DNA from: Isurus oxyrinchus
Lineage: Eukaryota
Direction of reading: 5' to 3'
Assembly (NCBI GenBank): GCA_026770705.1
Contig: JANJGN010000052.1
Span: forward strand, 1 to 64,000
DNA: 64,000 bases
In this document: positions 1-60,056 of the stretch, piece by piece
Layout of the letters: the number at the start of each line of letters is the position of its first letter
Position numbering within the stretch: the stretch's first letter is position 1
Notes under the pieces: model-generated
Told to the model about the DNA's origin: nothing
Database searches by the model: none
What the model saw: the letters and a program-made list of their open reading frames with translations, nothing else
Made by a program: the position numbers and the translations under genes

Positions 1-200
1 TGCACAGTCCTGTCACCGCCGGGCAGCTTTGAAAAGTTGATGTTGGCGTAGAAAAGCTCGTCTGGTTTGTCGGGGTTCCCATGTCCAACATCGCCTCCCA
101 CTGGACCTTCAGAGAGACCCCGGGGAGCTGGGGTCTCCCCCTCGCTAGTTGTGTCTCTGGTTGTGTTCCGGGCCTCAGTAATCAGCACGTTCTGTTTACC
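1..200 (-). CDS. Duplicated terminal cytoplasmic exon with canonical ITIM LFYANI (runs off the window edge)
   Basis: ctctgtag acceptor; GKQNVLITEARN...DKPDELFYANINFSKLPGGDRTV; open to position 1; ITIM at 39-56. Confidence 0.72.
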
Positions 201-627
201 CTACAGAGAAATAGAAACAGAAGACATCCTCACATCATTTACTGGTACTGATAGGGTTAAATTATTGTGCAGACTTGTTTAATTCTCTCTCTCCTATCGG
301 AAAAAAGACACCACCTATGGCAGTGCAGCACTCCCTCAGTACTGAGCTTCCAACAGTGCAGCACTCCCTCAGTGCTGACCCTCCGACAATACAGCGCTCC
401 CTCAGTACTGACCCTCTGTCAGTGCAGCACTCCCTCAGTACTGACCCTCCAACAGTGCAGCACTCCTTCAGTACTGACCCGCTGTCAGTCCCGCACTCCC
501 TCGGTAATGGCTCTGGTGAGTGACGGCTTGGATTCTGCGCTCAGGTGCCTGGTGTGAGGCTCAATAACATGAACCTTGTAATCAGAGAGAGGATGAGAGA
601 GAGGGATAGAGGAGGGATAGAGACAGA

Positions 628-1696: not shown

Positions 1697-1778
1697 CTGG
1701 TGCTTCACAGAGAGTGGACTGGGGGTCAATACAATGTCACTGGTCCCTGAAACTCTCTCCTCCATCGCTGTCTTTCTC
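1697..1778 (-). CDS. Duplicated cytoplasmic exon 1 (distal cassette of gene A)
   Basis: (K)RKTAMEERVSGTSDIVLTPSPLSVKHQ; intact splice sites; paralogous to 4163-4244. Confidence 0.7.
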
Positions 1779-2927: not shown

Positions 2928-3176
2928 TCAGTTATGCTCAAACCTGATCTGTGCGTATTCCATCTCCTCTTCCCTGTGGACAGACCCATCATCACTGGAC
3001 ACCCTCAAAACTTGGGGATTGGCGTAGAGAAACTCTTCAGGTTTGCCGGGGTTCCCAAGTCCAGCATCGCCTCCCACTGCATCTTCAGAGAGACCCCGGG
3101 GAGCTGGGGTCTCCCCCTCACTAGTTGTGTCTCTGGTTGTGTTCCGGGGCTCAGTAATCAGCACGTTCTGTTTACC
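2928..3176 (-). CDS. Gene A terminal cytoplasmic exon (proximal cassette; FLYANP, MEYAQI)
   Basis: ccgtag acceptor; GKQNVLITEP...EEFLYANPQV...EEMEYAQIRFEHN*; minus-strand AATAAA at 2396-2401. Confidence 0.8.
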   Translation of the reverse strand, partial: GKQNVLITEPRNTTRDTTSEGETPAPRGLSEDAVGGDAGLGNPGKPEEFLYANPQVLRVSSDDGSVHREEEMEYAQIRFEHN

Positions 3177-6100
3177 CTACGGAGAAATGGAAACAGAAGA
3201 CATCCTCACATTATTTACTGGCACTGATAGGGTTAAATTATTGTGCAGCTTCGTTAATGTCAGTCGTGTCTCAGTGAGTTTAACTCTCTCTCCCATGTCT
3301 TATGAAAGAAACCACCTATGGCAGTGCAGTGCTCCCTCAGGACTGACCCTCCAACAGTGCAGCACATCCTCAATAGTGACCCTCTGTCAGTCTCGCACTC
3401 CCTCAGTACTGACCCTCTATCAGTCTCGCACTCCCTCAGTACTGACCCTCCGACAGCGCAGCAAAAACCTCAGTACTGACCCTCTGACAGTGCAGCGCTC
3501 CCTCAGTACTGACCCTCCGATGGTGCAGCGCTCCCTCAGTACTGACCCTCTGTCAGTCTCGCACTCAATCGGTAATGGCTCTGGTGAGTGACGGCTTGGA
3601 TTCTGCACACAGGTGCCTGACGTGAGGCTCAATAACATGAACCTTGTAATCAGAGAGAGGATGAGAGAGAGAGAAAGAGAGAGAAAGAAAGGGAGGTTGA
3701 GATAGAGAGAGAAACTGGAATTTGTGAGGTGAAAATGCCTGGAATCTGCTTAAAGACTATGGGTTGTCTTAGAGGAGATTAGTTTGAGAATTTGTTAAAA
3801 AGTTATGATAATACTAGTTTGTAACCATGTGCATATGTTTAACTTGTGTAAATTAATATATGTCTCATTTAGTTTGATATAAACCCATCTCGAGAACTGG
3901 TGGTCTTATTCCTGAATTTAGAGATGCATCTCAAACATTCCACTGGGAAATATAGGTTATGACAGTTGTTTAAAGTTTCCCTCTGGGTTTTTAAACAACA
4001 GCCTTTACCAGTTGCTGTGTCATAACAGAGAGACAGCATGATACTGAACCATTGCTGACTCCACAGGTACAAATCAGTGGGTAACTGGGCAGGGAATCTG
4101 GGACATGTGTTGTCTACACACTGAGATTGAAGCTTTGGAGTGAGTGTAAACAGCTCCTGTACCTGGTGCTTCACAGAGAGTGGACTGGGGGTCAATGCAA
4201 TGTCACTGGTCCCTGAAACTCTCTCCTCCATCGCTGTCTTCCTCCTGCAATAACACAATATCACACTGTGGTTATCATATAGCAGAGAGTCAGTGCAGCT
4301 CAGACACAGAGCCCACTGAAACCTTACACCAACGACTGGACTGTCTCTTTAAATCACTTCTGCACAAAGCACAGAATTAAGAAGCTCGACACCATCCAGG
4401 ACAAAGCAGCCCGATTGATCTACACCCCATCCACCACATTAAACATTCACTCCCTCCACCATGAACACACAGTGGCAGCAGTGTGTGTAACATATACAAG
4501 ATGCACTGCAGCAACTCAGCAAGGCTCCTTCAACAGCACCTTCCAAACCCACGACCTCTACCATCTAGAAGGACAAGGGCAGCAGACACATGGGAACACC
4601 ACCACCTGGAAGTTCCCCTCTAAGTCACTCACCATCCTGACTTGGAAATATATCACCGTTCCTTCACTGTCGCTGGGTCAAAATCCTGGAGCTCCCTCTC
4701 TAACAGCACTGTGGGTGTACCTACACCACATGGACTGCAGTGGGTCAAGAAGGCAGCTCACCACCTCATTCTCAAGGGGCATTTAGGGAATGGGCAATTA
4801 GTATTGGCCACGCCAGTGACAGTCACATTCGATGAAAGAATTTAAAATCTCACAGCTCAGGAGGGAGCCACTCAGCCCATCGTGCCTGTGCTGGCCCTTT
4901 GTAAAAACTGTCCAATTAATCCTAAACAAATGTTTATATTAAAATCAAGTTAAATCTTCAGACTTACTTTCTCACACAGATGAAGATGAAGATTCCAGCC
5001 AGGAAAACACTCAACATGATCCCAGCCGTGAACAATCCTACTGTCCATTTACTGGAGTCTCTACCTGTAAAAACAGTCATTAATTACTGCACTACAGGTT
5101 TACAATGATGCTCCGATGTATCTCGAGAAGCGATACACTCACTCAGTGTTTAAATACTCATTCTCGGGCAATGCTGACATTTATTGTCCATCCCTAGTTT
5201 CCCCTTGAGAAGGTGGTGGGGGGTCTTCCTCCTGAACCACTGGTTTGTCCCAAACTGGGAGACCAGTTCAGAGGGCAGGTAAGAGTTAACCATGTTGGTG
5301 TTTGAGACTGGAGTCACATACACACCCAGACCTGTTAAAATGGACAGGTTTCCCTCACTAAATGTGTAATTATATCTTTAATTTCTATATATATGTATCA
5401 ACTAACATCACTAAAATAATCATTTATCACCTCATCTTCACACTGTTGTTTGTGGGATCTTGCTCTGCACAAATCAGCTGTTGCGTTTCTCAACGTAATC
5501 TATGTAACATTTATATATAATATTTATCAATGTAATCTATGTAACATTTATATATAATATTTATCAATGTAATCTATGTAACATTTATATATAATATTTA
5601 TCAATGTAATCTATGAAATGTTTATATATAATATTTTATCGTTTGGGAGGAGAACCTGAGTATTGCTGAGAAAGGACATTTTGTCAAAGCTTTCTGTCTT
5701 GCACCCAATGAAGCAGCTTATCTGGGGGAGAGGGTTCCAGATTTCCACTCCCCTTTGTGTGAAGAAGTGCTTCCTGACATCACCCCCTGAACGGCCTGGC
5801 TCCAATTTGACCAAGTGTTGCCATTGTCACATGAGGTCAGACGATTCAAAGCTTGGTCAAAGGGGTCAGTTGTAAAGAGCATCTTAGAGGAGGTAGAGAG
5901 AGAGTTGGAGAGGTTGAGGGAGCGAATTCTCGAGTTTAGGGATCAATCCAGCTGAGTGGAGATCGATCCTGAGCGAGTCTTTCACCTTTGACCCACAGAT
6001 ACATCTTGAACATGGCTTCCCCGTGTGGGTTTTGAACCGAGCAGGATGCAATCACTCCCCCCTCATCCTGGGGTCTCATCAGGGTGAGGGAACCAGTCAC

Positions 6101-9100
6101 CAGATGCCCATCTCTGACCTGCCACGACACAAAACCTCCGTGTGTTTGGTTACCACTGATGTTGGCACTGGGCAGGTGCCAGGTGAGGTCTCCGGGTGGG
6201 TTGGAGTTGGCCACACAGATGCAGGTGACCCCCTCTGACCTCCGAGTGCACTCTGACTGCTGGGAAATCTCCGGCTTATCTGAGGAGGGAAGGACAACAA
6301 TGAGACAACTTCATAGCAAAGTTAGAGCGTAAGATAGAATCTTCACACTGAAACACTCATTCCTGCCTTTGTTACCTCCGTACTCGACTATCGCAACACT
6401 CTCCTGCCCGACCTCTCATCTTCCACTCTCCGGAAACATCAGCTCATCCCAAACTCTGCTGTCCCCATGTCCTAACTCACACCGAGTCCCGTTCAGACAT
6501 CACTCCCTGTTGGTCACTGAGCTACACTGGCTCCCGGTCCGACAATGCCACAATTTTAAAATTATCATCGTTTCAAATCCCTCCTTACTCCCTCCCTATC
6601 TCTGTAACCTCCTCAAGCCCCTACAACCCTCCCTATCTCTGTAACCTCCTCCAGACCCTACAACCCTCCCTATCTCTGTAACCTCCTCCAGACCCCACAA
6701 CCCTCCCTATCTCTGTTACCTCCTCCAGCATCTACAACCCTCCCTATCTCTGTTACCTCCTCCAGCCCCTATAACCCTCCCTATCTCTGTTACCTCCTCC
6801 AGCCATCACAACCCTCCCTATCTCTGTAACCTCCTCCAGACCCCACAACCCTCCCTATCTCTGTAACCTCCTCCAGCATCTACATCCCTCCGAGGTCTCT
6901 GCGTTCCTCCAATTCCGGCCTCTTGACCATCCCCCGATTCCTACCGCTCCACCATTGGCGGCCGTGCCTTCAGCTGCCTGGGCCCCGAGCTCTGGAATTA
7001 CCTCCGTAAACCTCTCCATTTCTATCTCTCTCCTCATTTCAGACACTCCTTAAAATCCGGCCTCTTTCTCTGAGCTTTCAGTCCCTGTTCTAATATCTCC
7101 TTATGTATCTCGGAGAGGCGCAGGGTGAAAAAAGCAGGGAGGTGATGCTAGTTATGCTAAACCACAGCAAGGAAGCTGCCCTCAGACAGAAAGTGTTTGA
7201 GTTTTAAGCAGAGACAGGGGGAGTAAAATGCTTACATTGTACGTTCAGGTGGGTGATGTTGGAGGTGCTGTTACCCACTGGGTTCCTCGCTGTGCAGTAG
7301 AAACCTGCATCATTCTCCCGTGTTACAGGAGTGAAGGAGAGAGTGCGGCTACTTGTGTTTAACTGGGTGCTGGTGTTCCCCTCGATCCTGAACCAGGTGT
7401 AATGAGATATCGGTGGGACACTTTCACTGGAGCAGGTTAATGTGATATTGCTTCCCTCTCTTATCCCACCTGAGGATCTGCTGATGGACACCATCGTCTC
7501 CTGTGGGGAATCTGGAACAAAGACAGAGAACAATCAGCAGGTAATCCCCACACCCCACAGCTCTCCGAAATCTCTGCGCTCCTCCAATTCCGACCCCTTG
7601 CACATTCTCCCATTCCCATCTCTCCACCATTGGCGGCCGTGCCTTCAGCTGCCTGGACCCTAACCTCTGGAATTCCCTCCATCATTTCTCACCTCCTTCG
7701 GACAAAATCTGACCCCGAGTCACATTAGGAGATATTAGGAGAGGTGAGCAAAAGCTCGCTGAAAGCAGGAGGTTTTAATGGTGTGTCTTAATGGTTTTAA
7801 GGAGCATCTTAATGGTTGAGAAAGAGTTGGAGATTGTGTATCTCCCGCGCATCCCCCCTTGCAAATTCCTCTCCCTCCCAGAGCAATGTAAGGGTCCCTC
7901 CTGTCTTCACTTTTCACCCCACCAGCCTCCTCATTCAAAGGATCATTCTCCGCCATTTCCGCCAACTTCAGCATGATGCCACCACCAAACACATCTTCCC
8001 TTCACCACATCCGCCCCCCCCCCCACCCCCCCCCACGTTGGCATTCCATAGGGATCATTCCCTCCAGGACACCCTGGTCCACTCCTCCATCACCCCTAGC
8101 ATCTCAACCCTCTCCGATGACATCTTCCCATGCATTTGCAGAAGGTGCAACACCTGCCACTTTACTTCCTCTCCCCTCACTGTCCAATGACCCAAACACT
8201 CCTTCCAGGTGAAGCAGCGCTTCATGCAGACTTCCTTCAATATAATCTACTGCATTCACTGCTCCCAATGTGGTCTCCTCTACATTGGAGACACCAAACA
8301 CAGACTGGGTGATCGCTCTGATGAACACCTTCGGTCTGTCCACAAGCATGACCCAGACCTCCCTGTCGCTTGCCATTTTAACACCCCACCCTGCTCTCAT
8401 GCCCACATGTCCGTCCTTGGCCTGCTGCATTGTTCCAGTGAAGCCCAACACAAACTGGAGGAACAGCACCTCATCTTCCGACCTGGCACTTTACAGCCTT
8501 CCCGACTGAATATTGAGTTCAACACTTTCAGATCATGAACTCTCTCCTCGATCTTCACTGCTTTTTGAACCCTTTTTTTATGTATTCATTTTAATTGTTT
8601 TATTTGTTGACTGTTTTCCACTTATTTTTATTATTATTATTTGAAATTCATTTCCATTTTTATTGATTGTTTTATCCACAGATTTTAGTCTATTTTCGAT
8701 CTTTATTCCCTCCACTGTCCCCTCCCCCTGCCACACCCCCACAAGGGCCATCTGTCTCTTTCCAGAGTGCTTACCCTGGTCCGCCCATTATCACACTCTG
8801 CTTAATGTCACCATTAGCACCTCCTTTAACCAATACCACCACTGTTAACAACCCTTTGACCTTTTGTTTATGACATCTTCCACAATCTCTCCATTGCCTC
8901 CACCTATCGCTGGTTTTCTATCCAGCTCCACCTGTCCCATCGCCCCCCCTTAGACAGGATATATTTCACCACATGTCTACTTCCCTTTAGCTCTGAAGAG
9001 GAGTCTTACGGACTCCAAACGCTAACCCTGTCTTTCTCTCCACAGATGCTGCCAGATGCTCAGAATCAGCTGGATGGACAGAAAGACCAATGAGTGACTT

Positions 9101-10491
9101 AGATCAAGAGGAGATGTTCAGCAATTAAAAGGGTTGTTCAGGGCAGTTAGAGAGAGAAAGTTCATCAAGTACGGAGATTGGAAACGAAGACCTGACAGCC
9201 TTGTCCTCACAACCATTGAAGGAGAAACTGAGAGCAAAAACAGAAAGGGAGAGGAAAAATTGGGTGTGTGGATAACGTGGACTGAGCGAGGATTGAAGAA
9301 AACTGGATTAAAAACAACACGATCCCAATGGCTCCACGGAGACCACGGAGACAACAAACAAACAAATGTATCTCCACACTCACATTCCACAGTGATGGTT
9401 ATGAACCCCTCCACTGCTCCATGTTCATTCTCTGCCACACACTGATAGTCTCCAGTGTCCCTGGATGTAACGTGAGGAATCACCAACCACAGCTCATTGT
9501 TGGAACTTGTTCTGTTCATTGGGACATTAAGATGTCGCCACGTCAGGTTAGAAGCTGGGAAGCTCTCGACAGAGCAGATTATCACTGCAGAATTCCCCTC
9601 AATTATATTGATCGATGAAGCGTTAATCATATCAAGAGAAGTAATTGATGGGTTCCGTGGTGCATCTAAATACAAATAAAGGTTTCATTGTGAGCAAACA
9701 CAGTGCACAGCAAGACTCCAGGTATCATCTCTCTCCATCTGGTGTCTATGTGCATGTCAAGGCTTCTTTCTCCATTATAAGTTTCTATGTCACCATTTGT
9801 AACAGACACTGCCAGTGTGTTCCTTTTTGCATATTCATGGGAAGTGGATGTATCTATCTAGACCAGCATTTATTACCCATCCCTAATTGCCCTTGAGGAG
9901 GTGGTGGTGAGTTATTCACCCCCACAGAATTCCCAGCCTCTGACCGGCTCCTGTAGCCACAGTATTTATGGCCGGTCCAGTTAGTTGTTTGGTTAACATC
10001 CCCCAGGATGTGGATCGTGGGGGATTCAGCGATGGGAAAGTGATTGAATATCAAGGTGAGATGGTTAGATTCTCTCTTGTTGGAGATGATCACTGCCTGG
10101 TACTTGTGTGGTGTGAACATTACTTGTCATTTCTCAGCCCAAGCTGAGTGTTGTTCAGCTCTTGCTGCGTGTGGATATGTAAACTGTCACGCTGTAATTA
10201 CAGCCTTCCACCAGAGGAGACACTGTCAGGCTAGAAGAAAAGAAAGTGTCTTTCACATGATCAGGATGTTCACGGAGATTTCACCATGGAGGAATTGCTT
10301 TGGAATAATGGGGTATTGGGTGATAAACCTACAATTCACTGTTCAGGAGGTTGCTCCATCCAATTCAGTGTCTTGATGATCTGGAGTTTACCTTCCTTCA
10401 ACACAGAATCAGAGCTGCTACCGAGACTCGAGTGCAGCACTGAGACAGGAGAGGGAGCTGACACGTGTGTGTGTATGTGTGTTTGTGTGTG

Positions 10492-10549
<58 letters not shown>

Positions 10550-13500
10550 GTTGAAGTTTGCAGTAACTCACGTTCCACAGTGATGGTTATGAACCCCTCC
10601 ACTGCTCCATGTTCATTCTCTGCCACACACAGATAGTCTCCAGTGTCCCTGGATGTAACGTGAGGAATCACCAACCACAGCTCATTGTTGGAACTTGTTC
10701 TGTTCATTGGGACATTAAGATGTCGCCACGTCAGGTTAGAAGCTGGGAAGCTCTCGACAGAGCAGATTATCACTGCAGAATTCCCCTCAATTATATTGAC
10801 CGATGAAGCGTTAATCATATCAAGAGAAGTAAATGAGAGATTCTGTGGAGCATCTAAGAACAAATCAAGTATTTAATGTGAGCAAGCACTGTGCACAGCA
10901 AGACTCCATGCATCATGTCTCTGTATCTGATGCCTGTGTGCATTTCTAGGCACCTTCCCTCAAGATAAGTTCCTATGTCACATTTACAATGGGCACTGCC
11001 TATGTAAACTGTCACACTGCAGGAGCATTCTCCCACCAGAGACCCTGCCCATCCGGATTTAAAGAAACTCCCTTTCACATCCTCAGGATGTCCCCAAGGG
11101 CTTGACAGGCAATGAATTATATTTAATCGATGGAGCACTGAGGGGTAAATCTACAATTCTCTGTTAAGGATTTTGCTCATCCAATTCAGGGTCTTGTTGA
11201 TCTGGAGTTTACCTTCCTTCAGCACAGAATCGGAGCTGACACCGAGACTCCAGTGCAGCACTGAGAGAGGAGAGGGACCTCACATGAGTGTATGTGTGTG
11301 TGTGTGTTTGTGTTTCTGCACAAGTNNNNNNNNNNNNNNNNNNNNNNNNNNNNNNNNNNNNNNNNNNNNNNNNNNNNNNNNNNNNNNNNNNNNNNNNNNN
11401 NNNNNNNNNNNNNNNNNNNNNNNNNNNNNNNNNNNNNNNNNNNNNNNNNNNNNNNNNNNNNNNNNNNNNNNNNNNNNNNNNNNNNNNNNNNNNNNNNNNN
11501 NNNNNNNNNNNNNNNNNNNNNNNNNNNNNNNNNNNNTGTGTGTTGTCTGTGTGCGCGTGTGCATGTGNNNNNNNNNNNNNNNNNNNNNNNNNNNNNNNNN
11601 NNNNNNNNNNNNNNNNNNNNNNNNNNNNNNNNNNNNNNNNNNNNNNNNNNNNNNNNNNNNNNNNNNNNNNNNNNNNNNNNNNNNNNNNNNNNNNNNNNNN
11701 NNNNNNNNNNNNNNNNNNNNNNNNNNNNNNNNNNNNNNNNNNNNNNNNGTGTGTGTCTGTTGGTGCGTGTGTGGTCTGTGTAACCTGTAAACCTAACCCT
11801 TCCACACTGATGGTCACGAACACCCCCCACTGCCAACAAATTTATCTCAGTAAGGAACATGGCACTGCCAACCCCGTCAATACCATCTTCTAAACGGGGG
11901 ATTGGGTAGGAATCTGGTTTTATTGCTGCATTAACCTTTCTGTAATGTATGCAGAATCTGGTTGGAAATGAAATACCTGCTCCTTTTTACCTCCCTCCCT
12001 ACGATGGTATCGTTTTAACATATTGATGTGTCACAGCCGATTCTTTATTCTACAATCTGGGGTGTGTATCAAATAATTTACTTGACCAACCCTCCTAATT
12101 ACCTTGTGGGGACCACTGAACCGCGCTTTCAGAGGCTCCCCCTGCCAAGGCAATGATACTAACACGTCATCCCCCTGGTTGAGATGTTCGGGTCACAGCT
12201 TGCCTGTCTACCCCATTCCTTCATCTCTGTTTGAGAAACTATAAGATGTTCTTGTGCCACTTTGGAGGCTCCCATGAGCCGTTCCTGAAACATGGACACA
12301 TCATCTGAAATAGAGGATTCATCCCTCTGTCCGGAATATCTTTCTTTGATGAATTTCAGACAGCCTCTTATCTCGTGTCCATAAGTTATTCCAAAAAGAC
12401 TAAAACCTGCCGATTCAGTTGGTGAATCTCGTGTGGGAAATGCAAGAAAATCCAGTCCTTTGTCCCAGTCATGGGGAGTTCATGACAATAGCTTCAATCA
12501 TTGTTTTGAGGGTTTGTTGGTCCCTCTCTAAAGATCCCCGTGTCTATGGATGATATGCTGTGGACTTTAACTGTTTTATACCCAAATTACTCATTATGTT
12601 CGGAAAATTTTAAGACATAGAGATGGAACCTTGATCTGACTGGATCTCCAGCGGTAATCCATAATGGGTAAAAAATTGGGTTAACTTCCCTATTACTACT
12701 TTAGCTGTAATTGTTCCTAAAGGGATGGTCTCTGGAAATCGAGTTGTCATATCCATCATAGTGAGGCCATACTGGAGTCCGGCTTTCATTTTCGATAATG
12801 GTCTAACACAGTCCACTAATGCTCGTATCCAATGGTAACGGACAATTAACTCACTGGAGGAGGGGAATCCACAAATATCCCCATCCTCAATGAACGGGGA
12901 GCCCAGCACATCAGGGCAAAAGATAAGGCTGAAGCATTTGCTACAACAATTATCCATTTCTGTCTGGCGTAAAAATAAGTCAGGAAATGGTGCTCAACCA
13001 GGGCTTACAAAAGAAATTAGGGATAGTATTAGATCCAGAGAGGAGACATAAAATTGCCAGGGGAAGCAGCAATGCTGAGGATTGGGAGCAGTTTAGAATT
13101 CAGCAAAAGTGGACAAAAAGATTGATCAAGAAGGGGAAAATGGAACATGGGAGTAAACTTGCAGGGAACGTAAAAACCGACTGTAAAAGCTTCTATAAAT
13201 ATGTGAAGAGAGAAAGATTAGCAGTGACCGATGTAGGTTCCTTGCAGTCAGAAATGGGGGAAATTCTAATGAGAAACAAAGAAATGGCAGAAGAACTGAA
13301 CATATATTTTGGTTCTGTCTTCACAAAAGAGGACACAAATAATTTCCCAGGAATGTTAGGGAACCAAGTGTCTAGTGAGAGGGAGGAATTGAAGATAATC
13401 AGGATTAGTTTTAAAAAATGGAGCTGGAGAAATTAATGGGTTAAAGGTTGAACAGTCCCCAGGGCCTGAAAATCTACATCCCAGAGACTAACGGAAGTGA

Positions 13501-43073: not shown

Positions 43074-43211
43074 ATTCCACAGTGATGGTTATGAATCCCT
43101 CCACTGCTCCATGTTCATTCTCTGCCACACACTGATAGTCTCCAGTGTCCCTGGATGTAACGTGAGGAATCACCAACCACAGCTCATTGTTGGAACTTGT
43201 TCTGTTCATTG
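43074..43211 (-). pseudogene. Truncated C2 stalk exon remnant
   Basis: Only the MNRTSSNNELW...ITVE half remains; the upstream half is replaced by about 200 bp of unrelated sequence. Confidence 0.8.
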
Positions 43212-43549
43212 TGATATTCAGATATCAGGGCAGGACTCAGCAAGACAGTTCGCATGTTTACCAACAGAAAGTGAACAATAATTTATATTTAAAGGGAAGA
43301 GAGTGCTGATTGGTTGGCAAGTGGTCTCTGATAGGTGGAGGTGTTGCCATGGAAAATAATGTGTGTGAGATGTAAAGTTTAGACAGCTTGTCTCTTCATT
43401 CAGCAACAATCAAATAAAGATCAGTTAACTTCTATGGACTGTGAAGCACTTTGAGAGGCATGAGAATGTGGATACTGAGAACGGGCTGCACTGTCAGAGG
43501 GTCAGCGCTGAGGGAGTGCTGATGTAGAATGAAAGGTGTATGTAATTAC

Positions 43550-43845
43550 CTTGCACAGTTAGTACGAGGGTCCGCTCCGATGAAACAGATGGATATCTCA
43601 CTCTGCAGCTGAGAGTGTGTCCGTGGTGTTTGAGTGATGGGATCAGGGTCAGAACAGAAGTACAGGTCAGAGTGACACCATGCTGAGTTACAGTGTTTGA
43701 GACTGATCCAGGTACGTCAGTGGGAGTGTCCCAGGTTAAGACAGGTGCTGCTGTTCCATTGCACGTTGTGTTGAAGGTGCAGCTTACATCCACACGCTTT
43801 CCTGCAATAATTTCACAGGGAATATTGTGGGTTTATCTGTGAAAT
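43550..43845 (-). pseudogene. Gene C C2 domain-2-type exon, frameshifted
   Basis: 296 nt versus 297; tttcacaggg versus tttcagcaggg. Confidence 0.8.
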
Positions 43846-44572: not shown

Positions 44573-44938
44573 CAGAAATGTGAAGCTGGGTTGCAGGATA
44601 GTAGCTGTAACTATTACTGTTGTCAAATTCTATTCTGAAAAAATAAGGTCCTGCATCTTCCCGTCAGATGTTGTTTATAATCAGGGAACAGTCACCATCT
44701 TTCAGGTCTCCAGACAGCCGGGTCCAATGGTGGAACCGTGGTAACTCGTGACTGTGATCCTTGGAGTGAAAGGCTATAGACAATGTTCTCCGTTCCTCAT
44801 TATTAAACCAGACTCCACCTCGTGGTTGGTTTTCCAGACACGATGGATAACTGTAATGACATGGAATCTGTACACACGAACCTTCCTGCGCTGTCACCTC
44901 TCGTGGAGTGTCACCTTTCCACTCTTGTGAGGGTTCAG
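44573..44938 (-). pseudogene. Gene C V exon 2 with nonsense codon
   Basis: IINNI-TGA-REDAGPYFFR; paralogs have AGA at this position. Confidence 0.82.
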
Positions 44939-48306: not shown

Positions 48307-48683
48307 CAGAAACCTGAAGCTGGGTTTCAGGGTAATAGTTATGCTCGGACCATTGTCAAATTCTATTCTGAAAAAATAAGGTCCTTCATCTTCCCGTCTG
48401 ATGTTGTTTATAATCAGGGAACAGTCGCCATCTTTCAGGTCTCCAGACAGCCGTGTCCGATGGTGGAACCGTGGTAACTCGTGACTGTGATCCTTGGAGT
48501 GAAAGGCTATAGACCATTTAGACCATTTGTTCTGTATGTACCTCCTCATATACCAGATTCCGACATGTGTTTTCTTTACCAAATGTGATGAGTAACTGTA
48601 ATGACATGGAATCTGTACACATGAACCTTCCTGCGCTGTCACCTCTCGGGGACTGTCACCTTTCCACACTTGTGACAGTCCAA
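48307..48683 (-). pseudogene. Gene C V exon 1, frameshifted
   Basis: 377 nt; atgctcg versus atggctcg in the paralog near 28033. Confidence 0.8.
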
Positions 48684-49744
48684 CTGGGGAGAGAAATATC
48701 AATATTAAACTCTGGATGGTTTGTAGATCCACTAGACTCGATATCCACCCCCTCCATCACTGGGGCACAGTGGCTGCAGTTTGGACCATCTACAGGACAC
48801 ACAAGGAACTCCACAAGGTATCACAATGGATGGAAGAGAATCCTGGACACAGGAGTGGACAAGTTCATTCTACATTGGCTGATGGTCCTCAGGACCCTGT
48901 TTGTGCACAACCTGCTATCCAACAGAACTGAAGTTGGGGAAAATCCATTTGGAATTCCACTGTCCAGGGCATTGTGTTAACTTGCTGAGTTTGTTTTAAA
49001 TCTAACATCTATTTTTGGTCTGTTGCCTTAAAGGGAGTGTAACTGGGAGTCAGGTTAATTAGGAATTTTAGGAGTTATTATAGCAGTCATTGTAGTCTTA
49101 TGTATGTGCTTAAAATCTTTTATTTTGATGACAAATATTTTAATTTATTTCTTTAAATCTCTAAAGGTCTTGGTTCCCTATCAGAGCTCCATAAGAATGT
49201 TCTTTTACAAAGACTATTAGCCATAAATCTGTCCAAGCTGACGATGTTATTACCTTGGAGAAGTGACAGGAGGAAGTAAGATTTCCCGATCATTGTCCAC
49301 TCCCAGATATTCCTTTAGCTTCTGACTCTTAAACTGTGAAAGAGAAAGGAGTTAATGAGACCTCACCTCTTGTCCGACAGCTCTCAAGAGATCAGAACTG
49401 CTTTTAGACAATGTCTTCACAGACTAATTTGGTTCTCTGTGGGATGATAGGTGCTCCGCAGAGAGTTAAAAAGCTTTAAAAAAATAAATCAATGAAGGAC
49501 TTGCATTTCTATAGCACCTTTCACCACCTCAGGATGTCCCAAAGCTCATGTCCCTGCACTTCCCTCATCCTTTGAGCTAGAAAGATGTTCTGTACAACAG
49601 ACCTGAGCCTCACACCCTGATCTCAATAATCAGTAGAAATCTTTCAAAGGCATCAATCATTGGAATCTGTCTTTATAAAGTCACAACATCAAAAAAAGGA
49701 TGGTGTTGGTGGTGGAAGTGAATTCCAATTGTTCTGTTACTTAC

Positions 49745-50767: not shown

Positions 50768-52034
50768 ATTATTTCTGATCCAAACCCCATATTGTTGTAT
50801 TGTTGATTCCGATGCAGCATTGTAGACTGACTTGTCCCCAAGCTCAGCACTGACCCTACTCCAGCAGACACTGTGAAACACACTAACAAAGTGCCTCTAG
50901 CCTGAGCTCTGCATGTGTCGAGAGAAAGACAAATATACAGACTGAATATTGACACCTTTACACACAGACAGCTTTACCTTCCTTCTCTCTTTCAGTTATC
51001 TTGCTCCCTTATTGAAGTATCTAGCAAGGTGAGAATGGACAGGAAGTGTGACACTGAACAGCCTGTCTATTCTAGGAGCTGCTGTGTTGTCTTCATGGGA
51101 AATTCTGATTAAAATCAGCAAAAGACACAAATTTCATTCCTTTGCTATCGGCGTCCAAGCATCAGGATAGACTTCATCCCCCAGTATTTATCACTGTTTC
51201 TCAACTCAACACCTCACACCCTCTGCCACTCGCTGACCTGCACTGGCTCCCAGTCCAGCAGAGCCTTGAGTTTAAGACTCTCATCCTCAATTTCCATTCC
51301 CTCCATTCCTCTTCTCCAATCACTTTCTCCTCCAACCATGCAAACCTCAAAGTCCTCTGCTCTCCTCCAATTCTGCTGTCAGACAGGGAGTCAGTGTATA
51401 TCAGTGAGCACAGGGGTGATGGGTGAATGGGACTTGGTGTGAGTTTGTACACTGGCTCACTGCTGAATCTGTTCCCAATCACAGCTCAATAAGAATTATG
51501 TTTTACAAAGATGATTAGCCATAAATCTATCCGAGCTGACAATGATATTACCTTGGAGAAGTGACAGGAGGAAGTAAGATTTCCTGATCATTGTCCACTC
51601 CCAGGTATTTCATTGGTTCTCAAGCTGTGAAAGAGAAAGGAGTTAACGAGACCTCACCTCTTGTCCGACACCTCTCGAGAGATCAGAACCACTTTTAGAC
51701 AATGTCTTCACAGACTAATTTCATTCTCTGTGGGATGATAGTTGCTCTGCAGAGAGTTACAAGGCTTTAAGAAAGTAACACAATGAAGGACTTGCATTTC
51801 TATATCGCCTTTCACCTGCTCAGGACACCCCAAAGCTCATGTCCCTGCTCTTCCCTCATCCCTTGAGCTAGAAAGATGTTCTGTACAACAGACTTGAGTC
51901 TCACACCTTGATCTCAATAATCAGTAGAAATCTTTCAAAGGCATCAATCATTGGAATCTGTCTTTATAAAGTCATAACATCAACAAAGGACGGTGTTGGT
52001 GGTGGAAGTGAATTCCAATCATTCCATTACTTAC

Positions 52035-52180: not shown

Positions 52181-52249
52181 TACCAAGTTAGGAAGCATCT
52201 CTTTGCCTCGCACAGTTAGAAAACTGTTAACCCTTTGTGTGCCAAGAAT

Positions 52250-54809: not shown

Positions 54810-54926
54810 TTATAAATTCCCATAAACAGAATCCTCAGCAAAATCACAGTTTGCGTAAAGATCATCATCTGTATCAGGATTGACTCCGCGGTTAGATTTC
54901 ATTTCCAGATCCTTCTCATCTTTCTG
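54810..54926 (-). CDS. Gene D terminal cytoplasmic exon (DLYANC...SVYGNL*)
   Basis: tttctattacag acceptor; QKDEKDLEMKSNRGVNPDTDDDLYANCDFAEDSVYGNL*. Confidence 0.72.
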   Translation of the reverse strand, partial: QKDEKDLEMKSNRGVNPDTDDDLYANCDFAEDSVYGNL

Positions 54927-57900
54927 CTGTAATAGAAACAGAAATGATCAGAGTGACAATCAGAGTGATCAGTGTTTAGAATTATTGATCCAAATCAAAA
55001 ATTCCACCCACAATAGATACATTAATTATTGATACTGAACAGGGTTTGATTATTGATACTGAACGGGGTTTGATTATTGATACTGAACGGAGTTTGATTA
55101 TTGATTCTGAATGGGGTTTGATTATTGATTCTGAACGGAGTTTGATTATTGATTCTGAACAGGTTTTGATAATTGATTCTGAACGGGGTTTGATTATTGA
55201 TTCTGAATGGGGTTTGATAATTGATTCTGAACGGGGTTTGATTATTGATACTGGAAGGGGTTTGATTATTTACACTGAACAGGGTTTGATAATTGATTCT
55301 GAAAGGGGTTTGATTATTGATACTGAACGGGGTTTGATTATTGAAACTGAATGGGTTTTGATTATTGATTCTGAACGGGGTTTGATTATTGATACAGAAC
55401 GGGGTTTGATTATTGAAACTGAACGGGGTTTGATTATTGATTCTGAACGGGGTTTGATTATTGATACTGAACGGGGTTTGATTATTGATTCTGAACGGGG
55501 TTTGATTATTGATACTGAACGGGGTTTGATTATTGATTCTGAACGGGGTTTGATTATTGATACTGAACGGGGTTTGATTATTGATTCTGAACGGGGTTTG
55601 ATTATTGATTCTGAACGGTGTTTGATTATTGATTCTGAACGGGGTTTGATTATTGATTCTGAACGGGGTTTGATTATTGATACTGAACGGGGTTTGATTA
55701 TTGATACTGAACGGGGTTTGATTATTGATTCTGAACGGGGTTTGATTATTGATACTGAACGGGGTTTGATTATTGATACTGAACGGGGTTTGATTATTGA
55801 TTCTGAACGGTGTTGGGTGTGAGTTTGGTTGGGTTTGGGAGTGACTGTATAAAACATTGCAGATACAGGACTGGAGCAGCCATATCAATAACCAGGCTAC
55901 TGGAGCAGCTGAGAGGCTGGGGATCCTGTGGTGTGTGACTCACCTGATTCCTCAAAGCCCAACCACACTCACAGTTTTCATAAACAGGATCTCGATATTC
56001 ATCAACACGGTGGTTCGATTTGATTCCTGCTTTCCCCTCACCTCTCTTCTGTAATAGAGATGGAAATGGACAGAGTGACAATCAACATGATGTGTATTCG
56101 GTGTTGGGTTTGATTATTGAGGAGAGAGTTCCAGATTTCCACTCCCCTTTGTGTGAAGAAGTGCTTCCTGAAATCACCCCTGAATGGCCTGGCTCCAATC
56201 TGAAGTTCCGGCCCCCTTGTTCTGGACTCCACCCGACCCCCACCACCCACCCCCACCCGAGGGAATAGCTTCTCTCTATCGACCCTTTCGAGTGTTTAAT
56301 CTTTTTGAATCCCTCAATTAGATCACTCCTTAATCTTCTAGACCTGAGGGAATATAATCGTAGACTGTGTGTAACCTGTCTGCATAATTTACCCAGAAAG
56401 ATGTTCTGTACAACAGACCTGAGCCTCACACCCAGATCTCAATAATCAGTAGAAATCTTTCAAAGGCATCAATCATTGGAATCTGTCTTTATAAAGTCAC
56501 AACATCAACAAAGGACGGTGTTGGTGGTGGAAGTGAGTACCAATCGTTCCGTTACTTACCCAGTACCTGTCTGACTGCTCGCCTGGGGAGGAACTGCCCA
56601 CACGCTCTGACTGGGCTGAATGACCTCTTCCTGTGCTGCTCCCTCTGTGTATTTAATGAGAAAGGGTTGATGTATCTCTGTGAGACAAAATGAGGAATTG
56701 GGGAACAATTGTGAAAACCCTTTCACTGAAACGTAAGGCCTTAGTGTTGTGTTGTAAGCAAACTGTTAACCCTTTGTGTCCTGAGTGTGTCGTGATTCCT
56801 GTGTAAATCTGAACAGTCGTTGAGCGAGTTTCAATTCACTGCTCGCTCCAGGTGTTGAGGTGGATCTTCTGAAGGAGCAGACGTTGCTCAGCGCTCCTTA
56901 AAATTGTGAGATACTGAACAATGTGTAAGAGGACGAGAGAAAGAATGAGAAGGAGAGCATTAGTGGAGATAAGAGAGAGAGTGAATGAGAGAGAGAGAGA
57001 ATGAGAAGGAGAGCATTAGTGGAGATTGGAGAGAGAGCGAATGAGAGAGAGAGAGAATGAGAAGGAGAGCATTAGTGGAGGTAAGAGAGAGAGTGAATTA
57101 GACACTGAAAATGGAAAGAGATTGCATTCACTAACAAAAGAAATGTCTTCATTTATATATCCCCTTTCACATCCTCAGGAAGTCACAAGGTATTTTATGG
57201 TCCAGGTCAACACTGCCAGTTACAGGACTGTGTTGTGAAACAGTGAGTGTTGGATGAGATGTGAAACAGTGAGTGAACATCAAAGCTCTTCAGGGGTTGT
57301 GAAGGGTTTTGGGTTGTGAAAGGTGTTATAGAAATGCAAGTTCTTTCTATAAGGAGAGAAGGTTGAAGAAAACATGTTCAAAAACAACCAATTAAACCTT
57401 CACACTTACTTTCTCACACACTTGAAGATGAAGAATCCACTCAGTCCAACACTCAAACAGATTCCAGCTCCAAGCAATCCTGCTTTCCATTCATTGGAAT
57501 CTCGCCCTGTAAAATCAGTCAATGAATGACTCCGGTACAGTTTGAGAATGGTTCCCTATGTACATGTAGTAATTCTGAACTTGTGAAGTGATATTGTCTA
57601 TGCATGAAAGGTCTATACAAATAACATTTATCTATGTAATATTTATTGATAATATCCATGTACATGCAGGTTTCTATAAGGAGGATTCACATATAACAGA
57701 GGTGCCAAGCTGCTGAGGTGACACACAGGACTACATACACACCAAACAGCGGAAACAACATGCTATAGACAGAGCAAAGCGATCCCACAACCAACGGGTC
57801 AGATCTAAGCTCTGCAGTCCTGCCACATCCAGTCATGAATGGTGATGGACAATTAAAGATCTAACAGGAGGAGGATGTTCCACAAATATCCCCATCCTTA

Positions 57901-60056
57901 ATGATGGGGGAGCTCAGCACATCAGTGCAAATGACAAGGCTGAAGCATTGGCAACCATGTTCAGCCAGAAGTGCTGAGTGGATGATCCATCTCGGCCTCC
58001 TCCAGAGGGTCCCAGCATCACAGATGTCAGCTTTCAGACAATTCGATTGACTCCACGTGACATCAGGAATCAGCTGATGATACTGGATACAGCAAAGGCT
58101 ATTGGCCCTGGCAACAGCCCGGCAACAGGAAATAATGTGGCTACAAATGCGGGTCAGAGGCTGGGAACTCTGTGGTGAGTAACTCACCTCCTGACTCCCC
58201 AAAGCCTGTCCACCATCGGACAAGGCACAAGTCAGGAGTGTGATGGAATAATCTCCACTTGGCTGGATAAGTGCAGCTCCAACAACACTCAAGAACCTCG
58301 ACACCATCCAGGAGCAGCTTGTTTGATCGACAGCCAATCCACCAGCATAAACATTCATACCCTCCACCACTGGCACACAATGGCAGCAGTGTGTGCACCA
58401 TCTACAAGATGTGCTGCAGCAACTCACCAAGGCTCCTTCGACAGCAACTTCCAAACACTTAACCTCTTCCACCAAGACAGTTCCAAGTCAGTGAGGGCTT
58501 TGACTTGGAGGTGAACTTGAGGTGGTGGTCTGCCCTGGGACTTGGAACTATATCGGCCGTTCCTTCACCGTCGCTGGGTCAAAATCCTGGAACTCCCTCC
58601 CTAACAGCACTGTGGGTGCGCCTTCACCACATGGACTGCAGTGGTTAAAGAAGGCAGCTCACCACCACCTTCTCAAGGGGCAGTTACAGATGGGCAATGA
58701 TTTCTGGTCTTGTCAACAATGCCCACATCCCATGAGCTAATAAAAACAGAATGTTGAATTCTGTGTAACTCACGTTCCACAGTGATGGTTATGAACCCGT
58801 CCACTGCTCCATGTTCATTCTCTGCCACACACTGATAGTCTCCAGTGTCCCTGGATGTAACGTGAGGAATCACCAACCACAGCTCATTGTTGGAACTTGT
58901 TCTGTTCATTGGGACATTAAGATGTCGCCACGTCAGGTTAGAAGCTGGGAAGCTCTCGACAGAGCAGATTATCACTGCAGAATTCCCCTCAATTATATTG
59001 ATCGATGAAGCGTTAATCATATCAAGAGAAGTAATTGAGAGATTCTGTGGTGCGTCTATAAACATATAAAGATTTTAGAGTGAGCAAGCGCAGTGCACAG
59101 CAAGACTCCATGTATCATCTCTTTGAATCTGATGTCTGAATGCATTTCCAGGCACCTTTCCTCAGAATAATTTCCTCTGTCACATTTATAATGGACACTG
59201 CCTATGTAAACTGTCACACTGCAGTTGCATTCTCCCACCAGTTGAGGTGCTGTCAATCTAGAATGAAAGAAAGTTCCATTCACATCTTCAGGAATTCGCC
59301 AAGGGCTTGACAGGCAATGAATTGTATTTGATTGATGGAGCACTGAGGGGTAAATATAAAATTCACTGTTCAGGAGCTTGCTCATCCAATTCAGGGTCTT
59401 GCTGATCTGGAGTTTACCTACCTTCAACACAGAATCAGGGCTGATACCGAGACTCCAGTGCAGCCCTGAGAGAGGANNNNNNNNNNNNNNNNNNNNNNNN
59501 NNNNNNNNNNNNNNNNNNNNNNNNNNNNNNNNNNNNNNNNNNNNNNNNNNNNNNNNNNNNNNNNNNNNNNNNNNNNNNNNNNNNNNNNNNNNNNNNNNNN
59601 NNNNNNNNNNNNNNNNNNNNNNNNNNNNNNNNNNNNNNNNNNNNNNNNNNNNNNNNNNNNNGTGTGCCTGTTTGTATACATCTGTTCATGAGTGAGTGTG
59701 TGTGCATGTGTATGTCTATGTGTGTGTATGTGCGTCTGTATGTGACAGTGTTATTGCAATTTGTGTTAACTCACGTTCCACAGTGATGGTTATGAACCCC
59801 TCCACTTCTCCATGTTCATTCTCTGCCACACACTGATAGTCTCCAGTGTCCCTGGATGTAACGTGAGGAATCACCAACCACAGCTCATTGTTGGAACTTG
59901 TTCTGTTCATTGGGACATTAAGATGTCGCCACGTCAGGTTAGAAGCTGGGAAGCTCTGGACAGAGCAGATTATCACTGCAGAATTCCCCTCAATTATATT
60001 GATCGATGAAGCGTTAATCATATCATGAAAAGTAATTGAGAGATTCTGTGGTGCAT
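54810..60056 (-). CDS. Gene D (3' part; 5' exons lie beyond the window): Siglec-like receptor with Tyr-rich tail
   Basis: C2 exons 60056-59775 and 59055-58774, TM exon 57506-57410, Tyr-motif exons 56048-55944 and 54926-54810; the linking exon after the TM is ambiguous. Confidence 0.7.
55025..55812. repeat. 24-bp tandem repeat (ttgattattgat[a/t]ctgaacggggt), about 33 copies
   Basis: 8-aa periodic ORFs on both strands; lies in the last intron of gene D. Confidence 0.95.
55944..56048 (-). CDS. Gene D candidate cytoplasmic exon (PVYENC)
   Basis: ttacag acceptor; KRGEGKAGIKSNHRVDEYRDPVYENCECGWALRNQ|gtgagt; homologous to the terminal exon; alternative donor at 55973 in another frame. Confidence 0.55.
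56560..56700 (-). other. Fifth copy of the first-exon module, inside gene D after the TM exon
   Basis: Homology over about 56400-56700 to about 18085-18390; the 85-nt form (56644-56560) is phase 2 to 0 and open. Confidence 0.5.
57410..57506 (-). CDS. Gene D transmembrane exon
   Basis: RRDSNEWKAGLLGAGICLSVGLSGFFIFKCVRK; 97 nt, homologous to the gene A TM exon; ttttacag acceptor, gtaagt donor. Confidence 0.85.
58774..59055 (-). CDS. Gene D C2/I-set stalk exon (second copy)
   Basis: 282 nt, AG/GT flanks. Confidence 0.88.
59775..60056 (-). CDS. Gene D C2/I-set stalk exon
   Basis: 282 nt, near-identical to the gene A stalk exons, AG/GT flanks. Confidence 0.88.

What the first reader, a model, noticed from the sequence alone, without database searches (positions are those of the whole stretch)
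1..60056. Paired activating/inhibitory Siglec-like receptor cluster, probably in a cartilaginous fish
Seen: four head-to-tail minus-strand genes share leader, V and C2 exons but end in three different signalling modules: neutral TM plus ITIM-type tail (A), Arg-containing TM with a Tyr-free stub (B and pseudogene C), and neutral TM plus YxN-rich tail (D). The V of A and V2 of B differ at only 10 of 123 residues and both keep the essential F-strand Arg. Established: human Siglec-5/14 and Siglec-11/16 are inhibitory/activating pairs with near-identical ligand-binding domains kept similar by gene conversion, interpreted as a counter to sialic-acid-mimicking pathogens. Inference: this is an independently expanded, or very ancient, paired-Siglec system. 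I do not know of a description of one in sharks, but I cannot search.
Basis: partly seen in the sequence, partly recalled or inferred. Interest (0 to 1): 0.92.

Follow-up and report, generated by a model that had tools for sequence, protein, structure and literature searches.

The report
Shark Siglec-like paired receptor gene cluster
This stretch of a shark genome holds a tandem cluster of Siglec-type immune receptor genes whose very similar outer domains are joined to three different signalling ends, a lineage-specific parallel to the paired "brake and accelerator" Siglecs of primates that I found labelled in databases but in no paper.

Summary
The genes are real and lie on the minus strand. 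Gene A has a leader, one V, one C2, four Ig exons, a neutral TM and a Tyr tail. Gene B has a leader, V1, V2, C2, one Ig and an Arg-TM with a 13-residue Tyr-free stub. Gene C is a copy of B with four disabling lesions. Gene D is only a 3' part: two Ig exons, a neutral TM and a tail with three YxN motifs.

V exons match solved Siglec V domains (E about 1e-16) and keep the F-strand Arg. A's V and B's V2 differ at 10 of 122 residues.

- D has no leader, V or C2 in the window.
- A's own tail has no canonical ITIM. The canonical LFYANI sits in a duplicated tail exon at 1-200.
- B carries an extra outer V1.

Paralogs are 84-93% alike in non-coding DNA, so they are not haplotigs. Mosaic site patterns fit gene conversion. 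Contigs of public runs show C2 spliced to the Arg-TM exon. B's own Ig-to-Arg-TM joint was not seen. Assembly gaps fall in introns.

Relatives are auto-annotated Siglecs in many sharks and rays. I found no paper on them. The scan has already found this family on other DNA of this genome.

The parts
17758..17797 (-). Gene A leader exon (MIGKSYFLLSLLQ, donor G|gtaata)
   Evidence: It matches the N-termini of shark RefSeq Siglec models.
16527..16895 (-). Gene A V-set exon (369 nt, phase 1-1). Keeps the F-strand Arg (YFFRIE) and three Cys.
15382..15678 (-). Gene A C2-set exon
11326..11748 (.). Two assembly gaps (11326-11536 and 11568-11748) inside A's C2-to-Ig1 intron, at a (CA)n tract
   Evidence: Not filled, and continuity was not tested.
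10572..10853 (-). Gene A Ig exon 1 (APQNLS type, 282 nt)
9384..9665 (-). Gene A Ig exon 2, a tandem copy 96.8% identical to Ig1
   Evidence: A matching Ig-to-Ig junction appears as a loose end in contigs.
7236..7511 (-). Gene A Ig exon 3
5986..6279 (-). Gene A Ig exon 4 (membrane-proximal)
4968..5064 (-). Gene A neutral transmembrane exon (GLFTAGIMLSVFLAGIFIFICVRK)
4163..4244 (-). Gene A cytoplasmic exon 1
2928..3176 (-). Gene A terminal exon with its stop codon. Motifs are FLYANP and MEYAQI, with no canonical ITIM.
   Evidence: The same NPQV variant occurs in a Carcharodon model, P0152.
1697..1778 (-). Duplicated cytoplasmic exon 1' (alternative or relic tail set)
1..200 (-). Duplicated tail exon' with the canonical ITIM LFYANI. 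It runs off the window start.
38027..38066 (-). Gene B leader exon
31655..32029 (-). Gene B V1 exon (outer V). The Arg is kept (YLFRTD).
27999..28367 (-). Gene B V2 exon, 95.4% nt and 92% aa identical to A's V
26396..26683 (-). Gene B C2 exon (in-frame 9-nt deletion; donor C|gt)
   Evidence: Contigs of X1 and X8 carry the deletion.
23217..23498 (-). Gene B Ig exon
   Evidence: A C2-to-Ig joint is seen in X1.
21372..21511 (-). Gene B Arg-TM exon with its stop codon (SGGEILHVILILGIRAVIFLVAVVITIAGVCVWERQTVKGSRQTV*)
   Evidence: It is homologous to the C-termini of shark proteins P0006, P0022 and P0117.
49254..49293 (-). Gene C leader exon
48307..48683 (-). Gene C V1 exon, 377 nt, with a 1-nt deletion that shifts the frame
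44573..44938 (-). Gene C V2 exon with an in-frame stop (AGA>TGA)
43550..43845 (-). Gene C C2 exon, 296 nt, with a 1-nt deletion
43074..43223 (-). Gene C Ig exon remnant. The 5' half and the acceptor are deleted.
41250..41389 (-). Gene C Arg-TM exon, intact
   Evidence: The junction letters of the C2-to-Arg-TM joint fit this gene.
51552..51591 (-). Orphan fourth leader exon (MIRKSYFLLSLLQ, donor intact) with no V of its own
59775..60056 (-). Gene D Ig exon 1. D's leader, V and C2 are not in the window.
59477..59661 (.). Assembly gap in D's Ig1-to-Ig2 intron
58774..59055 (-). Gene D Ig exon 2
57410..57506 (-). Gene D neutral TM exon (GLLGAGICLSVGLSGFFIFKCVRK)
56560..56644 (-). Gene D cytoplasmic exon 1 (GSSTGRGHSAQSERVGSSSPGEQSDRYW)
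55944..56048 (-). Gene D cytoplasmic exon 2 (contains VYENC). Its use is uncertain.
   Evidence: P0007 has the counterpart and P0016 lacks it.
54810..54926 (-). Gene D terminal exon (…DDLYANCDFAEDSVYGNL*)

Best explanation
The window holds part of a tandem, head-to-tail cluster of Siglec-family receptor genes of a shark. The closest relatives are in Carcharodon and Cetorhinus. The family is a radiation specific to sharks and rays.

Exon modules are combined in different ways:
- one or two sialic-acid-type V domains;
- a C2 domain;
- one to four further Ig domains;
- one of three signalling ends.

Gene A ends in a neutral TM and a CD33/MAG-like Tyr tail, so it is probably inhibitory. That holds best if the duplicated exon carrying LFYANI is used. 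Gene B ends in a TM helix with a buried Arg and no signalling tail, so it probably pairs with an ITAM adaptor of the DAP12 or FcR-gamma type and activates. Gene C is a decayed copy of B. Gene D ends in a neutral TM and a conserved tail with two YxN tyrosines 11 residues apart. That tail probably recruits Grb2-type SH2 proteins or acts like an ITAM.

A's V-C2 and B's V2-C2 are kept alike by recent duplication plus patchy gene conversion, so the two would see similar ligands with opposite outputs.

Shown here: the exon anatomy, family membership by sequence, the divergence of the paralogs, mosaic ancestry, and splicing of a C2 exon to the Arg-TM exon. Inferred: sialic-acid binding, the adaptor, the signs of signalling, and co-expression.
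For: - V exons: Pfam V-set and Ig_CD22. phmmer against the PDB gives Siglec-5, -7, MAG, -8, CD33, -10 and sialoadhesin at E 2e-16 to 8e-13, with YFFRIE aligned on the essential Arg.
- All exons of A, B and D are open, have lengths that fit their frames, and carry AG/GT borders in matching phase.
- A is colinear with a 751-aa Stegostoma model. B's end matches P0006 and P0022 (Ig to Arg-TM). D's end matches P0007 and P0016.
- All three tail types recur in sharks and rays.
- Non-coding identity between paralogs is 84-93%, against 95-99% in exons.
- Site patterns among A, B-V2 and C-V2 change along the alignment (chi-square 33.4, df 4, p about 1e-6).
- A contig joint from C2 to the Arg-TM exon appears in three runs from three studies. 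A C2-to-Ig joint appears in one run.
- In the tree, the window's V exons fall in a 42-row clade whose named rows are all sharks and rays (support 90/86). The V1 and V2 types each have starred support (names).
Against: - No binding, expression-by-cell or signalling data exist.
- A's own terminal exon lacks a canonical ITIM or ITSM.
- B's outer V1 differs from A's V, so the ligand faces are not matched the way they are in Siglec-5/14.
- dN/dS between A-V and B-V2 is about 0.5, with no sign of positive selection.
- The C2-to-Arg-TM joint carries gene C's letters, not B's. B's own Ig-to-Arg-TM joint was not among the joints shown.
- The runs are contigs whose RNA nature is only guessed.
- A's 5' and 3' halves are linked across unread gaps.
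- The tree has 123 columns, a midpoint root and many unnamed rows.
Confidence: 0.72

Rival explanations
1. This is an ordinary birth-and-death multigene family with exon shuffling and no functional pairing. A and B look alike only because they were duplicated recently and their Ig exons are under purifying selection. The different tails serve different cell types or ligands, not a decoy-countering pair.
For: - B has an extra V1 and a different number of Ig domains. C is decaying, and orphan leaders and relic tail exons lie about.
- dN/dS is about 0.5.
- The genome holds many such clusters.
Against: - A-V and B-V2 are closer to each other (95.4% nt) than B-V2 is to its duplication partner C-V2 (90.2%), although the B and C flanks are 98-99% alike.
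- Site patterns are mosaic.
- The three tail types are conserved across sharks and rays on similar ectodomains.
Confidence: 0.2
2. These are Siglec-like in fold only. The V domains bind something other than sialic acid, such as a protein ligand, as some Arg-bearing Siglec relatives may do.
For: - No binding data exist.
- The family sits outside the tetrapod CD33-related-type clade.
- Identity to solved Siglecs is only about 35-40%.
Against: - The essential Arg is kept in all five V exons, even in the pseudogene.
- The N-terminal Trp of sialoadhesin and the 3-Cys pattern are kept.
- The top PDB matches are all Siglecs.
Confidence: 0.1
3. The paralogs, or gene A's model, are assembly artefacts: haplotigs, collapsed repeats or a false scaffold join at the gaps.
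For: Three gaps fall at microsatellites next to tandem Ig exons. Gap lengths are only estimates. A's V-C2 and its Ig-TM-tail lie on opposite sides of a gap.
Against: - Copies differ by 7-16% in non-coding DNA and by large insertions, far beyond allelic difference.
- A's exon order equals that of a full-length Stegostoma model.
- Contigs of independent runs carry B's private 9-nt deletion.
Confidence: 0.05

Closest known systems
Human Siglec-5/Siglec-14 and Siglec-11/Siglec-16 paired receptors (PMC4042635, PMC5701461)
   Same: Neighbouring genes carry very similar N-terminal V-C2 exons. One has a Tyr-motif tail and the other an Arg/Lys-bearing TM with a short tail. There are signs of gene conversion, and one member has become a pseudogene.
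   Different: - The shark system arose independently in a shark-and-ray clade.
- Identity is 92% aa in V, not about 99%.
- The activating-type gene has an extra outer V domain and fewer Ig domains.
- A third tail type is present.
- Function is untested.
Auto-annotated elasmobranch Siglecs in RefSeq (for example Carcharodon 'CD33-like' XP_041037177 and XP_041037180, Cetorhinus 'Siglec-12' XP_078389734, Stegostoma 'Siglec-10' XP_059497404, Scyliorhinus canicula 'Siglec-8' XP_038670873)
   Same: Same leader, V, C2, Ig, TM and tail exons at 67-97% aa identity. The same three tail types occur.
   Different: These are machine names borrowed from mammals, not orthologues. I found no published analysis of the family.
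Human Siglec-12 (two V-set domains)
   Same: Gene B has tandem V-set domains at its N-terminus.
   Different: The resemblance rests on my own knowledge. The shark V1 and V2 types are old paralogous lineages shared with Cetorhinus and with Mustelus and Scyliorhinus. They are unrelated to the primate duplication.
Conserved fish Siglecs: Siglec-1, CD22, MAG, Siglec-15 (PMC7226832)
   Same: Same superfamily. The A-type tail ends in a TEYAQIRF-like motif, recalling (from memory) MAG's …EYAEIRVK and CD33's …TEYSEVRTQ.
   Different: That paper states that fish genomes lack CD33-related Siglecs, and it does not treat sharks. The family here is a large, multi-tail expansion, not one of the four conserved genes. 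V similarity to Siglec-15 (38 bits) and CD22 (25 bits) is far lower than to Siglec-5, Siglec-7 and MAG (59-63 bits).

Membership tests
Siglec (I-type lectin) family | N-terminal V-set Ig domain with sequence similarity to Siglec V domains | tested here: met
   Pfam V-set at E 6e-12 and Ig_CD22 at E 2e-9. The 18 best PDB hits are all Siglecs, at E 2e-16 to 2e-8.
Siglec (I-type lectin) family | Conserved F-strand arginine that binds the sialic-acid carboxylate | tested here: met
   YFFRIE and YLFRTD align on YFFRVE (Siglec-5), YFFRME (Siglec-7) and YNFRFE (sialoadhesin). The Arg is present in all five V exons.
Siglec (I-type lectin) family | Three-Cys pattern in V (intra-sheet B-E disulfide plus a Cys for the bond to domain 2) and a C2-set second domain with an extra Cys | tested here: met
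   V reads GSCvqiPC…DCSL, exactly three Cys. C2 reads VSCTFNTTC…SCRV, with Pfam C2-set_2 at E 4e-9. The disulfide bonds themselves were not modelled.
Siglec (I-type lectin) family | Binding of sialylated glycans | not testable with these tools
   Needs glycan arrays with V-Fc fusions and an Arg mutant.
CD33-related Siglecs (tetrapod clade) | Groups phylogenetically with mammalian CD33-related Siglecs | tested here: not met
   In the V tree, marmot Siglec-12, Xenopus Siglec-12, other frog rows and turtle rows form a clade with 100/99 support that excludes the shark-and-ray clade. The root and bona fide human references are missing, so this is provisional.
CD33-related Siglecs (tetrapod clade) | Cytoplasmic ITIM plus a membrane-distal ITIM-like motif | tested here: inconclusive
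   Relatives and the duplicated exon at 200-1 have L-x-Y-A-N-I and TEYAQI. A's own terminal exon has FLYANP and MEYAQI.
Paired activating/inhibitory receptors | Adjacent genes with closely similar ligand-binding domains | tested here: met
   A and B are neighbours. V is 92% aa identical and C2 is 97% nt identical. B has an extra V1.
Paired activating/inhibitory receptors | One partner has a charged TM residue and a short tail, the other has inhibitory Tyr motifs | tested here: inconclusive
   The Arg-TM and the Tyr-free stub are clear. The inhibitory partner's motifs are degenerate in the exon nearest the TM and canonical only in the downstream copy.
Paired activating/inhibitory receptors | Association with an ITAM adaptor, SHP recruitment, and co-expression | not testable with these tools
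Paired activating/inhibitory receptors | Homogenisation of ligand-binding exons by gene conversion | tested here: inconclusive
   The high-identity A/B-V2 tract (92-99%) spans the V exon and about 220 nt of intron, and flanks fall to about 70%. Site patterns are heterogeneous (p about 1e-6). Donors may lie elsewhere in the family.

The most novel reading that the evidence does not exclude
Elasmobranchs evolved, independently of mammals, a three-way Siglec signalling system on shared, conversion-homogenised V-C2 exons. The three arms are an ITIM-type brake, an Arg-TM adaptor-coupled accelerator, and a third self-signalling class. The third class has a conserved C-terminal motif, [DE]x Y x N [CFW] x7 Y x N [ILVM]*, with ITAM spacing and Grb2-type Asn. 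It has no counterpart among mammalian Siglecs that I know of. If so, paired (or tripled) glycan-sensing receptors would be an early and recurrent solution in jawed vertebrates.
Probability: 0.3. Interest if true: 0.75.

Novelty: new variant of a known kind. Interest (0 to 1): 0.55.

Why it matters
Paired Siglecs are usually presented as a recent primate or mammalian answer to pathogens that mimic sialic acid. A paper on teleosts (PMC7226832) states that fish lack CD33-related Siglecs. A large shark-and-ray radiation of Siglec-type genes would show that this receptor logic arose separately in the oldest living jawed-vertebrate lineage. Its genes have inhibitory-type, adaptor-coupled and YxN-tail versions, share exons and show signs of conversion. 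The family gives comparative immunologists a defined gene set to test for glycan specificity, adaptor use and pathogen pressure. The value of this particular window is lessened because homologues are already in RefSeq under Siglec names, and because this scan has already reported the family elsewhere in the same genome.

Tried and rejected
- Haplotig or assembly duplication: rejected on 7-16% non-coding divergence and large structural differences between the copies.
- Positive selection on V: Nei-Gojobori dN 0.040 and dS 0.079 between A-V and B-V2, so no support.
- Literature: five searches (Siglec with shark, cartilaginous, Chondrichthyes, teleost or paired receptors; DAP12 with cartilaginous fish) found no paper on shark Siglec expansions or shark ITAM adaptors. 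The whale-shark genome paper only lists Siglecs among Ig families.
It remains open.
- A leader, V or C2 for gene D above 60057: none found.
- Placing the family against true human MAG, CD22, Siglec-1, Siglec-15 and CD33-related sequences: no tool gave me these as usable sequences, so the tree uses only search hits.
No gap was filled.
- Structure prediction and complex prediction were judged redundant or impossible (no adaptor sequence) and were not run.
Full report
**What is in the window**

The minus strand carries many Ig-type open frames. Five of them are V-set exons that also hit Pfam's CD22-type first Ig domain. Three are C2-set_2 exons, and several are Ig_3-type exons.

The V exon at 16895-16527 was searched with phmmer against all solved structures. 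The 18 best hits are all Siglecs: Siglec-5 (2e-16), Siglec-7, MAG, Siglec-8, CD33, Siglec-10, sialoadhesin and Siglec-15. The motif YFFRIE aligns on YFFRVE and YFFRME, the site of the essential arginine. The outer V of gene B (32029-31655) gives sialoadhesin as best hit, with YLFRTD on YNFRFE and the N-terminal Trp conserved.

An exhaustive HMMER search found 1457 relatives. The best are RefSeq models from Scyliorhinus, Cetorhinus, Mustelus, Chiloscyllium, Carcharodon, Pristis and Stegostoma. They are named Siglec-8, -10, -12, -13, -14, CD33-like or MAG-like. The host is therefore a shark, as other notes on this genome (NAR-TCR loci) also say. The closest proteins are from Carcharodon and Cetorhinus.

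**Gene models**

I laid these proteins on the window with tblastn and read every border. All models are on the minus strand, with phase-1 AG/GT borders for the Ig-type exons.

- **Gene A:** leader 17797-17758 (MIGKSYFLLSLLQ), V 16895-16527, C2 15678-15382, Ig 10853-10572, Ig 9665-9384, Ig 7511-7236, Ig 6279-5986, neutral TM 5064-4968, cytoplasmic exon 4244-4163, terminal exon 3176-2928. It is colinear with the 751-aa Stegostoma model.
- **Gene B:** leader 38066-38027, V1 32029-31655, V2 28367-27999, C2 26683-26396 (in-frame 9-nt deletion), Ig 23498-23217, and a last exon 21511-21372. The last exon encodes SGGEILHVILILGIRAVIFLVAVVITIAGVCVWERQTVKGSRQTV*. That is a helix with a buried Arg and a 13-residue stub without Tyr.
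- **Gene C:** a segmental duplicate of B, about 90% identical over more than 9 kb. It has a 1-nt deletion in V1, AGA>TGA in V2, a 1-nt deletion in C2 and an Ig exon cut at 43223. Its Arg-TM exon (41389-41250) is intact.
- **Gene D:** only two Ig exons (60056-59775, 59055-58774), a neutral TM (57506-57410) and tail exons (56644-56560, 56048-55944, 54926-54810). The tail ends …VYENC…DDLYANCDFAEDSVYGNL*.

The three signalling modules are real, and so are the pseudogene and the retained Arg. The count of 10 differences holds: 10 of 122 in-frame residues and 17 of 366 nt.

Three points need correction.

- D has no leader, V or C2 in the window. The fourth leader, at 51591 (MIRKSYFLLSLLQ, donor intact), is an orphan downstream of D's stop.
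- A's terminal exon reads FLYANP and MEYAQI, so it has no canonical ITIM or ITSM. A Carcharodon model has the same NPQV variant. The canonical LFYANI sits in a duplicated tail-exon set (1778-1697 and 200-1) that follows A's stop and runs off the window. Which tail A uses is unknown.
- B has an extra outer V1 that is only 83% identical in nt to A's V.

**Gaps**

The gaps at 11326-11536 and 11568-11748 lie in A's C2-to-Ig1 intron. The gap at 59477-59661 lies in D's Ig1-to-Ig2 intron. Both sit at a (CA)n tract at the same homologous place upstream of an Ig exon, within about 1-kb tandem exon units.

No exon or frame is affected. Further Ig-exon copies could be hidden in the gaps. The link between A's 5' and 3' halves rests on the scaffold. 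It is supported only by colinearity with the Stegostoma model.

**Are the copies artefacts?**

No. Paralogous non-coding DNA is 84-93% identical and differs by kilobase insertions. Exons are 95-99% identical. Contigs of two public runs carry B's private 9-nt deletion.

**Gene conversion**

I made a three-way alignment of A, B-V2 and C-V2 with their flanks.

- A and B-V2 are 92-99% identical through the V exon and about 220 nt of the following intron. Further out they fall to about 70%.
- B and C are 98-99% identical just upstream of V2, yet B-V2 is closer to A (95.4%) than to C-V2 (90.2%).
- Informative sites favour A+B in the V exon (29:7:9) but A+C in the introns (21:34:19 and 5:27:16). The heterogeneity gives chi-square 33.4, df 4, p about 1e-6.

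This is mosaic ancestry, as expected from patchy conversion. The donor could be another family member elsewhere in the genome. The patches coincide with the C-C' and G-strand regions. dN/dS is about 0.5.

**Transcripts**

- A joint 21513>26399 appears in three runs from three studies. Once the aligner's offset is allowed for, it is a canonical splice of a C2 exon directly to the Arg-TM exon.
- The junction letters (ACTGTGCAAG|ACAGTGG) and one contig's 3' UTR fit gene C, not B. Gene C has no Ig acceptor left, so this is its expected splice. A near-identical paralog elsewhere could also be the source.
- A 219-aa shark protein (P0117) has the same C2-to-Arg-TM architecture, intact.
- A C2-to-Ig joint (23500>26399) appears in one run.
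- A loose end at 23218 reads as an Ig-to-Ig junction like A's Ig1>Ig2.
- B's own Ig-to-Arg-TM joint was not among the joints listed. That architecture is present in proteins P0006 and P0022.

The Arg-TM exon is therefore used in spliced RNA with Siglec ectodomain exons.

**Place in the family**

I built a maximum-likelihood tree of 78 V domains (123 columns, midpoint root).

- The window's V exons fall in a 42-row clade whose named rows are all sharks and rays (support 90/86).
- V1-type sequences (B-V1, C-V1, Cetorhinus domain 1) form a clade with 100/98 support.
- V2-type sequences (A-V, B-V2, C-V2, Carcharodon, Cetorhinus domain 2, Mustelus, Scyliorhinus) form a clade with 99/94 support.
- The ray-finned-fish 'MAG-like' and 'Siglec-6' proteins form a neighbouring clade.
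- Marmot Siglec-12, Xenopus Siglec-12, other frog rows and turtle rows form a separate clade with 100/99 support.

This supports an independent expansion, not orthology to the primate pairs. True human references and an outgroup were not available to me, so it is provisional.

**Mechanism (inferred)**

The signalling roles below rest on motif rules recalled from my own knowledge.

- A-type tails in relatives read LxYAxINF…TEYAQIRF. That is the CD33/MAG-like arrangement of an ITIM plus a distal motif, so I infer SHP recruitment and inhibition.
- The Arg sits in the outer third of B's helix and the tail is a stub. This is the mark of receptors that need DAP12 or FcR-gamma. Which adaptor is used cannot be read from the sequence.
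- The D-type tail is conserved from sharks to rays as Y-x-N-[CFW]-x7-Y-x-N-[ILVM] at the C-terminus. It has ITAM-like spacing with Asn at +2, the Grb2 SH2 preference. I read it as a third, self-signalling class, with low confidence.

**Novelty**

Human Siglec-5/14 and Siglec-11/16 are established pairs shaped by gene conversion (PMC4042635, PMC5701461). A teleost study states that fish lack CD33-related Siglecs, and it does not mention sharks (PMC7226832). Five literature searches found no paper on this shark family.

RefSeq already labels the homologues as Siglecs. This scan has reported the same family on several other pieces of this genome, two of them followed up. I therefore rate it a new variant of a known kind. 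It is of moderate interest, and this window adds one well-resolved cluster and splice evidence to a known lead.

Noticed in passing
window 18334, 38603, 49831, 52121 (minus strand), each about 0.5 kb upstream of a leader exon: Each leader (A, B, C and the orphan) is preceded by a relic copy of the D-type cytoplasmic exon 1 (RGSSTGRGHSAQAERVG…). The relics are 93-94% identical to D's real exon at 56644-56560. This suggests that the duplication unit began inside the tail of a D-type gene.
   Followed up: partly
window 51552-51591 (minus strand): An intact fourth leader exon (MIRKSYFLLSLLQ, with its donor) has its promoter-like flank but no V exon before gene C's own leader. It is an orphan or an alternative first exon.
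   Followed up: partly
window 260-560, 3260-3600, 18500-20110, 23520-24020, 38800-40000, 50040-50380, 60100-63900: Arrays of a 33-bp satellite, open in several frames (…SLSTDPPTVQH…), flank or sit inside every gene. They may promote unequal crossing-over in the cluster.
   Followed up: no
window 54880-55900 and 52200-53520: A 24-bp satellite (about 40 copies) fills the intron between D's last two tail exons. A 43-bp repeat array lies upstream of the orphan leader.
   Followed up: no
window 30738-31434 and 47390-48086 (minus strand); 12616-12957: Reverse-transcriptase fragments lie at the same place in the V1-V2 introns of B and C, so the insertion predates the B/C duplication. An integrase-like fragment lies in A's C2-to-Ig1 intron next to the gaps.
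   Followed up: partly
window 1-2390 compared with 2977-4859: A tandem duplication of A's two cytoplasmic exons (83-94% identical). The downstream copy keeps the canonical ITIM LFYANI, which the upstream copy has lost.
   Followed up: partly
window 11271-11326 and 59430-59476: The assembly gaps in A and D begin at the same homologous (CA)n/(TG)n microsatellite upstream of an Ig exon. The tandem Ig-exon units are therefore likely under-counted.
   Followed up: partly
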